From positions 34,720,001-34,784,000 of the forward strand of contig OZ260661.1 of assembly GCA_965285935.1 (NCBI GenBank): DNA of 64,000 nucleotides. Direction: 5' to 3'. Below are positions 61,201 through 64,000 of the stretch, piece after piece. A program made the translations under genes and the position numbers. Positions within the stretch are counted from its first letter, which is position 1; each line of letters opens with the position of its first letter. Under the pieces are notes generated by a model. The model saw nothing but the letters and a program-made list of their open reading frames with translations. It was not told the DNA's origin and did not search any database. This stretch comes from Ophelia neglecta (taxonomy: Eukaryota).

Positions 61201-62866
61201 TATGAAACGAGCGGAAGTGTTTAGCCTACAGCATAGGGCCTATCTGTCTGTAAAGATTACCCAGTGCATAGTTGTCCAAAGCTTTGTTTTCTAGTTATGT
61301 CCAACTGTCACTTTCACCGCACCTGATAGCAAGGCTACAGATGTCAAATGTCTTTTTAATTTTTCCCCCACCCATAGTTGCTCTTGGACCTTCGATGAAA
61401 GGCTTAGAATTTTCAAGATTATGGGTCCCAACTTCAACCCTGCTAGGCCAGCGATGTTCCCTGTTTTACTACTAGTCTCCGAATGCCGCTTTAGGAAGCT
61501 GGGTTTAGGCCTATGTATTTCGGCGGAAAGTTAAGAAAGAATACCCTAACCAGAAGAAAAGGAAAAATCCACTGGACGTGTCATTATTGGAAATAGCTAG
61601 AATCAAGACTAAATCTACTCATATGCCCCTTTGCGTACAATCTTGGTTGTATAACAAGAGGCTATAGGAAACATACAATACCATTTTCATTGAGAATCGG
61701 AGTGTTTAATCATGTATCCTTGATAGCTTCTTTTCTAACTAACGGCCTATAGACCATGCAGAGAAAAGCAACATAAAGTGCCTATTACCTGTCCCAGTCA
61801 TATTTTATTCACGAGAACCACTTAACTGAGGATAGTCTCCCGCTATGTCCATGGAAAAATCAGATACTGCCGAACTGGATTCAATGCCGGCGGGGGGGGG
61901 GGGGGGGGGCTATGGGAATGTCCCGTTCCTAGGGTCGCAATTCTGAGTTAAAGCATCATAACTGTCGACCTCATATTTTCCCCAAAGTGCCCTATGACTA
62001 GGGCTCCATTTTGACCAAAACGCCCTAAATAGAGTCAATAGCAAGGGCCTTAGATAGAGCAAAACTTATCCCGATTTGTTGAACAATTAAATAATACGGT
62101 AAATAATTTTTATAGGGGCCCTTACTAAGCCTAATATTTAACATAGATGCTCCAACTAAAGGGGGAGGCCAGTGTGTGTAAGGAAATGCAAATAAAAGGC
62201 TAATCAACTGTAGATGAATTAGCAACTTCAGTCTCTAATAGGCTATAAGCCTAGGACTATAGCATTCGTACTTCAGATTTCATTACCAATTTTATCTAAT
62301 TAAAAGTAGACCTGCCATATCAATAGGCCTATGTCTTAGATGCATATAGGCCTATCACCATTAGCATTTCAATCTGTGTATGTTTCCTTTTCACGGTTTC
62401 AAAATCCTTTTAGATTGTCCCTTGTAATCAATATCAACAAGTCCCTCTATCATCTATTAAATCTCGCTTTTGCACTTTGGCCCTTCTCCAAGGGGCACAT
62501 AGGCCGATAAAGGGTCCAAAACAAAGTTGTGTCTCTCTATAATAAAAGGTATGCCAAGTTGTGGTCGTGAAGTTGCGGGGGACTTGACATATTTATGACC
62601 TTTTAGGGGGCTCAAACGGTCAAATTAAAGGTTTGCCTTGGGAGCGCTTAGCGGAGGAAAATTGCGAGGGTCCCCCTCACGAATGCTATGTTCCAAGATT
62701 TCGAACAGCCCGAATATGCCCAGACGATAGACAATCTGTTTACTTTAAAAGAAAGACCGAAGTTCGCCATTTATTCATCATTTATAATTAGCATTACAAT
62801 GTTCTATACTACTTCCAATTTAATAGTTAGCAGATCAAATCATTCGCCAGGCCGGATTATTTGTCG

Positions 62867-62983
62867 GCCGGAATAGCTCAGTTGGGAGAGCGTTAGACTG
62901 AAGACCTTAAGGCAAGGATAGTATAAGCTCCTAGCTTATACTATCCTTGCTAAAGGTCCCTGGTTCGATCCCGGGTTCCGGCA
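62867..62983 (+). tRNA. tRNA-Phe: tRNA-Phe(GAA) gene or pseudogene with a 44-nt insertion 3' of the anticodon
   Basis: GCCGGAATAGCTCAGTTGGGAGAGCGTTAGACTGAAGA...CTAAAGGTCCCTGGTTCGATCCCGGGTTCCGGCA matches metazoan tRNA-Phe. Anticodon GAA at 62900-62902, acceptor stem GCCGGAA/TTCCGGC fully paired, A and B boxes intact; 117 nt versus the usual 73. Confidence 0.9.
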
Positions 62984-63012
62984 ATGCCGAACAATCCGGC
63001 GGCCGACGAATA

Positions 63013-63018
63013 TTTTTT
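63013..63018 (+). terminator. Pol III terminator (T6) for the tRNA-Phe locus
   Basis: First run of at least 4 T, 30 nt after the tRNA 3' end. Confidence 0.65.
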
Positions 63019-64000
63019 AAAGGTCTGCACTTTTAAAGAGCCTGGAAATGTGCACAAATACATATTACCGTCGATCTAGGCCTAAAAGATATATCAGTTT
63101 TGGCATTATGGGTCACGTTAAATCTAATCGAACCTTTTGCAATGTTTGAACCAGCGTTGCTTGTCCGCTTACTATAAAAGCATCATTCCTTAACAGGAAA
63201 ACTGACGTTAATATTTGGATTTTTTGATTTTACATATCGATTCGATTAAACATATTTTTGATATCAGTGACAGTGTACAGGAAATTCTATTTTTATAATT
63301 TATGATTGATTTATTAATTACCGTGGCAGTTGCAGGGAGAACGACAAATTTAGCGCAAACGCACTGAAAAGGTGAAATTATCTTTATATTCTTCGCTGCT
63401 TTTAGTTTAACAAAATATATGTACACAATATGTACTCCTACATAATACTTAACTTTAGACACACTTCGTATTATGAAGTGGTACCAAAATGAGCTACGAG
63501 AAGTAGTATAGACCCACTCTGGATTTATATGTTCTGATACAATTGGTGAAGAAACTTTTGTGATGTGCCAAAAACAGGGCCACAAATGTATAGTCCATAT
63601 ACTGGCACTTCATTTTATGATCCAAAAGGGAATGTCATCAGGTGACAAACGGAGCTATGGGTAAAGATCCTTCCCGCTTTTTCATTTTATGATCCAATTG
63701 GTCATGATGTGCCAAAAGGAGCTTTGTGTACCCCTTCCTGGTTTTTCAATTTATGAAACAAATATCGATTTCATGTTCCCACAAGAAGCTATGTGGGGTA
63801 AATTTCAACTAGCCATTTCCATATTTTTTACATTTTCGATTCCAAAGGTGAGTGTGCCCAAAGGGGTGTTTTGCATATAGGTAGTTATTTCTGGCTTAGG
63901 TTACAATATCGGTTCTGAATTACCTCAGTTTGATTATCCAGAGATGAGTCGTGTTCGCTTGTTAACGTTGTCCTTTTGGCCATCTAATGTTAGGACTTGC

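What the first reader, a model, noticed from the sequence alone, without database searches (positions are those of the whole stretch)
62903..62958. tRNA-Phe interrupted by a perfect hairpin that is not a canonical tRNA intron
Seen: 44 extra nt after the anticodon. GCAAGGATAGTATAAGCT-CCT-AGCTTATACTATCCTTGC (62912-62950) is a perfect 18-bp stem with a 3-nt loop, extendable by GACCTT/AAGGTC. It parses as a 37-nt palindrome (62913-62949) between near-identical 7-mers CTTAAGG and CTAAAGG, like a target-site duplication. Known: eukaryotic tRNA introns lie at 37/38 and use an anticodon-intron pair; removal at 37/38 here would leave U38/G39 with an A31.G39 mismatch and no such pair, and metazoan tRNA-Phe genes are normally intronless. 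The A/B boxes, D arm, T arm, acceptor stem and T6 terminator are all intact. Inference: a tiny tRNA-targeting insertion or transposon footprint (Dada transposons target small-RNA genes), a fold-back replication product, or a natural Pol III tRNA-shRNA cassette yielding small RNAs.
Basis: partly seen in the sequence, partly recalled or inferred. Interest (0 to 1): 0.8.

Follow-up and report, generated by a model that had tools for sequence, protein, structure and literature searches.

The report
Transposon excision scar inside tRNA-Phe gene
The hairpin that splits this tRNA-Phe gene is the scar left when a P-type cut-and-paste transposon jumped in and out again; it is an ordinary kind of event, and it disabled one of about sixty copies of the gene.

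Summary
Window 62867-62983 is a tRNA-Phe(GAA) gene carrying 44 extra bases: a 37-nt palindrome (62913-62949) between two near-identical 7-mers. It is not an intron. The palindrome arms are the outermost 17 and 20-21 nt of the 33-nt terminal inverted repeats of a transposon that has 6.7 and 7.8 kb copies elsewhere in this genome. Those copies encode a P-element-type transposase (THAP, RNase H-like and GTP-binding insertion domains; E 6.7e-15 to the Drosophila P transposase structure).

About 35 similar scars lie at unrelated sites, nearly all with perfect 7-bp target duplications. Twenty are one 30-nt palindrome, which is 17+17 nt joined over a 4-nt self-complementary tip. That is the product expected from the 17-nt staggered cut known for Drosophila P elements.

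All 29 other tRNA-Phe copies I read through (of about 60 found) are uninterrupted. No 44-nt removal restores the anticodon stem. Dada, a fold-back artefact and a canonical intron are rejected. Verdict: a new member of a known kind, of modest interest.

The parts
62867..62983 (+). tRNA-Phe(GAA) gene, 117 nt instead of 73, interrupted in the 3' side of the anticodon arm
   Evidence: Rfam RF00005 at 50.3 bits. Identical to the species' canonical copy except for the insert and two bases.
62905..62908 (+). Two substitutions relative to the canonical gene (T39>C at 62905, A42>T at 62908). Both make the left flank the reverse complement of the right flank 62953-62958.
   Evidence: Comparison with the 29 other tRNA-Phe copies read through. 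The resulting 6-bp outer helix appears in the fold.
62906..62912 (+). Left copy of the 7-bp target-site duplication (tRNA positions 40-46), with one mismatch to the right copy
62913..62929 (+). Outermost 17 nt of the transposon's left terminal inverted repeat
   Evidence: Identical to the TIR start of the full-length copies L031:1016 and L032:997
62930..62949 (-). Outermost 20 nt (21 counting a shared T at 62929) of the right terminal inverted repeat. The 3-nt 'loop' 62930-62932 is TIR positions 18-20.
   Evidence: Maximal TIR match of 21 on this side, with a 1-nt overlap
62950..62956 (+). Right copy of the 7-bp target-site duplication, canonical tRNA sequence
63013..63018 (+). T6 run, the likely Pol III terminator, 30 nt past the tRNA 3' end
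   Evidence: Read directly. Function is inferred.

Best explanation
A P-superfamily DNA transposon inserted into this solitary tRNA-Phe gene between tRNA positions 46 and 47 and duplicated positions 40-46 as a 7-bp target-site duplication. It later excised. The transposase cut left the outermost TIR bases on each donor flank, and end joining sealed them head to head: 17 nt from the left end and 20-21 nt from the right. The result is a 37-nt palindrome bracketed by the duplication.

Shown: the arms are identical to the element's TIRs, the transposase is P-type, and there is a genome-wide family of such scars with unique 7-bp duplications.

Inferred:
- A 17-nt staggered cut as in Drosophila P. 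It is inferred from the mode of 17 nt retained per side and from the dominant 30-nt product, which is 17+17 nt overlapping by a 4-nt self-complementary tip.
- A few nt of templated synthesis before joining, to explain retention of 18-23 nt.
- One template-switch (quasi-palindrome correction) event for the two clustered substitutions next to the scar.

Consequence: the gene can probably still be transcribed, since its A box, B box and terminator are intact and the insert has no T4 run. Its product has a 25-bp hairpin in place of the anticodon arm and cannot decode. The loss is buffered by about 60 intact copies.
For: - The arm 17-mer recurs 78 times against a control of 2.
- 26 exact-ended scars were found by pattern search, and about 35 after allowing mismatches. 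28 of 34 tabulated sites have perfect and mutually different 7-bp duplications.
- The full-length copies L031 (6.7 kb) and L032 (7.8 kb) have 33-nt TIRs starting with the same 17-mer.
- Their ORF pieces hit Pfam THAP (6.9e-10), the P-element HTH, TNP-like RNaseH_N (1.3e-32), GBD (6e-7) and RNaseH_C (9.4e-10). They also match PDB 6P5A, the Drosophila P transposase, at E 6.7e-15, with the DEM and VSD catalytic motifs aligned.
- Per-side TIR retention is 17 nt in 41 of 70 sides, 18-23 nt in 23 and 14 nt or fewer in 6. Twenty of 35 scars are the 30-nt form.
- Scars lacking most of one end (L009, L071, L084) still have perfect duplications, and they cannot have moved in that form.
- The Drosophila literature describes the same architecture: a duplication, up to 17 nt, filler, up to 17 nt, a duplication, with 17-nt 3' overhangs and SDSA followed by end joining (PMC2895639, PMC10983969).
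- The target logo has T at position 2 and A at position 6 in 30 of 34 sites each. This matches the 7-bp GTANTAC target of Galileo, a P-superfamily member (PMC4168063).
- All 29 other tRNA-Phe copies read through lack any insert, and neither the arm 17-mer nor the scar pattern hits any other tRNA-Phe site.
Against: - No reads could be laid, so neither the assembly at this exact site nor alternative alleles (empty or occupied) were seen.
- The 30-nt form alone would also fit 15- or 16-nt overhangs, so the 17-nt figure rests on the retention mode and on the absence of a 34-nt product.
- A third of the sides retain more than 17 nt, which needs an extra repair step.
- The left duplication copy and its neighbour carry two substitutions that the simple model does not predict.
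- Identical 30-nt units at many sites could in principle be copies of a tiny mobile element.
Confidence: 0.85

Rival explanations
1. The 37-nt palindrome is a miniature non-autonomous element (a micro-MITE made of two TIR tips) that transposed into the tRNA gene as such, rather than being a scar left after excision of a long element.
For: Twenty sites carry the identical 30-nt unit, each with its own 7-bp duplication. One other site (L070) has the same 37-nt form as the window, in mirror orientation.
Against: - The non-30-nt forms are nearly all different from one another, as expected of independent repair junctions.
- Truncated forms lacking one end also have perfect duplications.
- In Drosophila, P transposase needs internal binding sites well inside the ends (established knowledge), which a 30-nt unit cannot hold.
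- The 30-nt form is the predicted deterministic product of joining two 17-nt tails at their self-complementary tip.
Confidence: 0.08
2. The interrupted gene is a working Pol III unit whose long hairpin is excised as a non-canonical intron or diced into small RNAs. The two flank substitutions would have been selected to lengthen the stem.
For: The A box, B box and T6 terminator are intact and the insert has no T4 run. The fold is very stable, at -60.7 kcal/mol with z -6.7. Both substitutions extend the helix by turning an A.A and a U.G into Watson-Crick pairs.
Against: It is the only such copy among about 60 Phe genes found. No excision of 44 nt restores pair 31-39. The hairpin sequence is fully explained by transposon ends. 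No RNA run holds the locus. A single template-switch mutation explains both substitutions without selection.
Confidence: 0.04
3. The palindrome is an assembly or replication fold-back artefact.
For: Perfect palindromes are a known failure mode of some long-read assemblies.
Against: About 35 loci show the same TIR-derived architecture with site-specific 7-bp duplications. Contigs of three runs from one sample hold 69-88% of the sampled words of the 901-nt stretch. That sample may be the one the assembly came from.
Confidence: 0.01
4. It is the trace of a Dada-type transposon that specifically targets small-RNA genes.
For: The duplication length of 7 bp falls in Dada's 6-7 bp range, and the site is inside a tRNA gene (PMC3706591).
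Against: Dada elements lack terminal inverted repeats and insert at one fixed site of their target genes (PMC3706591). This element has 33-nt TIRs, a P-type transposase and scattered targets.
Confidence: 0.01

Closest known systems
Drosophila P-element excision footprints (17-nt 3' tails joined by alternative end joining; PMC2895639, PMC10983969)
   Same: Same architecture: duplication, TIR tip, short filler or microhomology, inverted TIR tip, duplication. Retention peaks at 17 nt per side. Longer retention is explained by short repair synthesis before joining. The transposase has the same domain set.
   Different: The duplication is 7 bp, not 8. The TIR is 33 nt with an unrelated sequence. 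The tail tip is self-complementary, so one 30-nt product dominates. These are natural, fixed scars read from a genome assembly of an unnamed animal, not products of an excision assay.
Galileo and 1360, P-superfamily elements with 7-bp duplications (PMC4168063)
   Same: A 7-bp duplication with a palindromic target preference: T at position 2 and A at position 6, as in GTANTAC.
   Different: Galileo has very long fold-back-like TIRs and is known from Drosophila. This element has short 33-nt TIRs and is about 6.7 kb long.
Dada transposons (PMC3706591)
   Same: A DNA transposon trace inside a multicopy tRNA gene, with a 6-7 bp duplication.
   Different: Dada has no TIRs, strict site specificity and a different transposase. 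None of these holds here.
Canonical eukaryotic tRNA introns (position 37/38; established knowledge)
   Same: Extra bases 3' of the anticodon in a gene with otherwise intact arms.
   Different: Here the insertion point is 46/47 with a duplication of positions 40-46. It is present in one gene copy only, and its removal cannot restore the anticodon stem.

Membership tests
P superfamily of DNA transposons (parent element) | Transposase with an N-terminal THAP domain | tested here: met
   Pfam PF05485, E 6.9e-10, on L032:1452-1733
P superfamily of DNA transposons (parent element) | RNase H-like catalytic domain split by a GTP-binding insertion domain | tested here: met
   PF21787 at 1.3e-32, PF21788 at 6e-7, PF21789 at 9.4e-10. 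PDB 6P5A at E 6.7e-15 with the first two acidic motifs aligned. The third catalytic residue was not checked.
P superfamily of DNA transposons (parent element) | Terminal inverted repeats and 7-8 bp target-site duplications | tested here: met
   33-nt TIRs. 7-bp duplications at 34 sites, 28 of them perfect.
P superfamily of DNA transposons (parent element) | 17-nt staggered donor cleavage | tested here: inconclusive
   Indirect only: the retention mode is 17 nt (41 of 70 sides) and the dominant product is 17+17-4 nt. It needs biochemical mapping.
Transposon excision footprint | Both element tips in inverted orientation, bracketed by the target duplication, with the tips identical to those of full-length copies | tested here: met
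Transposon excision footprint | Alleles with the full element or the empty site at the same locus | not testable with these tools
The flanks are single copy, with no haplotig.
Dada superfamily | No TIRs, one fixed insertion site in a small-RNA gene family, Dada transposase | tested here: not met
   criteria from PMC3706591
Canonical eukaryotic tRNA intron | Located at 37/38, and removal yields a tRNA with an intact anticodon stem | tested here: not met
   Insertion at 46/47 with a duplication of 40-46. Every 44-nt removal leaves A31 opposite C or G.
Canonical eukaryotic tRNA intron | Shared by the gene copies of the isoacceptor | tested here: not met
   The 29 other copies read through are uninterrupted, out of about 60 found by pattern.

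The most novel reading that the evidence does not exclude
The scarred tRNA gene is still transcribed by Pol III. Its hairpin of about 25 bp, built entirely from the transposon's own ends and lengthened by the two flank substitutions, would be processed into small RNAs that act on the resident P-family element. That would be a footprint turned into a natural tRNA-driven shRNA against its parent transposon.
Probability: 0.03. Interest if true: 0.75.

Novelty: new member of a known kind. Interest (0 to 1): 0.3.

Why it matters
The finding removes an apparent oddity, a metazoan-type tRNA-Phe with a strange intron, by giving it a concrete and checkable origin. As a by-product, about 35 natural scars act as a repair-junction census. 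They suggest that the unusual 17-nt staggered cut of Drosophila P transposase is shared by a distant P-family element with 7-bp duplications in another animal. They also suggest that this element has been cutting and pasting recently: its copies are 98.5% alike and the scars are almost unmutated. The family would be a convenient natural system for studying P-type excision repair outside flies.

Tried and rejected
- ARAGORN on the window found no tRNA. The Rfam model was needed.
That used the only call, so assembly validity, heterozygosity and expression at the site are untested. I also kept clear of the 3' half of the tRNA and searched only the flanks 62150-62860 and 62990-63700.
- No RNA run holds the stretch.
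- Enrichment of scars at tRNA genes: 2 of about 35 lie in or within 30 bp of a tRNA gene. The genome has up to 44,574 rough tRNA-like candidates, which puts the chance expectation near 0.4, so I do not claim targeting.
The table was rebuilt from the stored loci instead.
- Host species identity was not pursued, because the costly protein searches would not change the verdict.
- Earlier scan notes near the window gave nothing.

Full report
**What is there.** Window 62867-62983 matches the Rfam tRNA model at 50.3 bits, with a long unaligned block after the anticodon. ARAGORN misses it. Read directly, the gene is a tRNA-Phe(GAA) of 117 nt. Positions 1-38 and 47-73 are intact. Between them lie:
- a 7-mer at 62906-62912;
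- a 37-nt palindrome at 62913-62949;
- a second 7-mer at 62950-62956 that differs from the first at one base.

A T6 run follows at 63013-63018.

**The palindrome is made of transposon ends.** The 17-nt arm occurs 78 times on the two strands of the window's own 762-Mb genome, against 1 and 1 for the reversed control. Most hits are close inverted pairs. A few lie kilobases apart.
- Two of the distant pairs bound elements of 6.7 kb (L031:1016-7691) and 7.8 kb (L032:997-8797). Their 33-nt terminal inverted repeats begin with that 17-mer, and both have perfect 7-bp target duplications.
- The two elements are 98.5% identical apart from two extra inserts in the longer one.
- Their open frames hit Pfam THAP, the P-element HTH, and the TNP-like RNase H N-terminal, GTP-binding insertion and RNase H C-terminal domains.
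- The catalytic piece aligns to the Drosophila P transposase structure 6P5A at E 6.7e-15, with the DEM and VSD acidic motifs in register.
- Only four transposase-bearing copies at 95% identity or more exist in the assembly.

The parent is therefore a low-copy, young P-superfamily element.

**A family of scars.** A gapped pattern for the two 12-nt tips finds 26 exact sites. With one mismatch allowed and truncated forms added, there are about 35.
- Of the 34 tabulated sites (32 scars plus the two full-length copies), 28 have a perfect 7-bp duplication and the rest have one mismatch. The duplications are almost all different, with two chance repeats.
- Twenty scars are one 30-nt perfect palindrome. 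The others are 22-65 nt, and nearly every one has its own junction.
- Measured against the TIR, retention per side is 17 nt in 41 of 70 sides, 18-23 nt in 23 and 14 nt or fewer in 6.
- The window's scar is 17 nt of the left end plus 20-21 nt of the right end. Its 3-nt 'loop' is TIR positions 18-20 of the right end.
- Scars that lack most of one end (L009, L071, L084) still carry perfect duplications. They could not have transposed in that state, so insertion followed by imprecise excision does operate in this genome.

**Mechanism.** Drosophila P transposase cuts the 3' strand at the element tip and the other strand 17 nt inside. This leaves 17-nt 3' tails of TIR sequence on the donor flanks (PMC10983969; PMC2895639). 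Published fly junctions have the same layout as seen here: a duplication, up to 17 nt, filler, up to 17 nt inverted, a duplication. Longer retention is attributed to short synthesis from the sister copy before end joining (PMC2895639).

In this element the 17th base closes a 4-nt self-complementary tip. Two 17-nt tails can pair tip to tip, and fill-in then gives 17+17-4 = 30 nt, which is the dominant product. A second self-complementary 4-mer at TIR positions 16-19 would give a 34-nt product if the tails were longer. None was found among the 26 exact sites. I take this as indirect support for a 17-nt stagger. It is an inference, not a measurement.

**Target choice.** The duplication logo has T at position 2 and A at position 6 in 30 of 34 sites each. 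This is the same palindromic pattern as the 7-bp GTANTAC target of Galileo, another P-superfamily member (PMC4168063). The tRNA site has the T but not the A.

A tRNA scan of 41 flanking loci found only one other tRNA. It is an initiator-like tRNA-Met whose 5' end lies 27 bp from a scar. Two of about 35 is suggestive. However, the genome holds very many tRNA-like sequences, with 44,574 rough candidates, so I do not claim a preference. Dada is excluded because it lacks TIRs, has a different transposase and inserts at fixed sites (PMC3706591).

**State of the gene.** The genome has at least 62 hits to the tRNA-Phe 5' half, mostly in a 1.93-kb tandem array on C8. All 29 other copies read through are uninterrupted and share one canonical sequence.

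Against that sequence the window copy has the insert and two substitutions, at 62905 and 62908. Both convert the left flank into the exact reverse complement of the right flank 62953-62958, turning an A.A and a T.G opposition into Watson-Crick pairs.
- Two independent hits doing this within four bases, while the other 73 tRNA bases and the 37-nt scar are unchanged, is unlikely.
- One short template switch across the palindrome (quasi-palindrome correction, a known mutational process) explains both. I rate this at about 0.4.
- Selection for a longer stem is the alternative.

In the predicted RNA fold the acceptor, D and T arms form, and the anticodon arm is replaced by a 6-bp plus 19-bp hairpin. 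No removal of 44 nt restores pair 31-39. The product cannot serve in decoding, and the many intact copies buffer the loss. The promoter boxes and terminator are intact and the insert has no T4 run, so transcription is possible but unshown.

**Limits.** From then on I worked beside those places. Three runs of one sample hold most of the stretch as contigs, and none is RNA. The flanks are single copy, so there is no second haplotype in the assembly to compare. Earlier scan notes call it an invertebrate, which I did not verify.

**Verdict.** This is a genuine feature with an ordinary explanation: a P-superfamily excision scar in a redundant tRNA gene. The side results are of modest specialist interest. 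They are the 17-nt signature, the Galileo-like target and evidence of recent activity.

Noticed in passing
G000:C8:12586933-12727586: Large tandem array of tRNA-Phe genes with a period of about 1.93 kb: a block on the + strand followed by a block on the - strand. Several copies carry single-base variants, including some in the anticodon loop.
   Followed up: partly
L073:295-429 (G000:C7:74694881-74695015): A second scar of the same transposon lies 27 bp upstream of an initiator-like tRNA-Met gene. It carries an extra 6-nt partial tip next to the 30-nt palindrome.
   Followed up: partly
G000:C3:561431 and G000:C3:582319 (L021, L022): Two transposase-bearing copies about 21 kb apart sit in mirror image, with flanks that are exact reverse complements of each other. 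This is either a real inverted duplication or a palindromic misassembly on a 2-Mb contig.
   Followed up: no
L032:4770-4883 and the about 0.84 kb extra segment L032:4777-5610: The C9 copy of the transposon is interrupted by another repeat. The last 35 residues of the ORF match more than 35 places in the genome at 80-100% identity.
   Followed up: no
G000:C8:19209686, C1:140564523, C2:109691658, C5:114240236: Distant P/THAP9-like sequences (30-36% identity) lie within long open frames of 652-837 aa. They may be other P families or domesticated THAP9-like genes.
   Followed up: no
G000:C2:102983663-103020799 and C2:119649857-119690746: Further large tandem tRNA gene arrays, with periods of about 1.54 kb and about 0.87-1.4 kb. 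The genome gives 44,574 rough tRNA-like candidates in a first look.
   Followed up: no
window 62840-62866 and 62984-63012: The leader and trailer of the tRNA gene contain short stretches complementary to each other and similar to the acceptor stem. The first bases of the 3' trailer are shared with other dispersed Phe copies.
   Followed up: no
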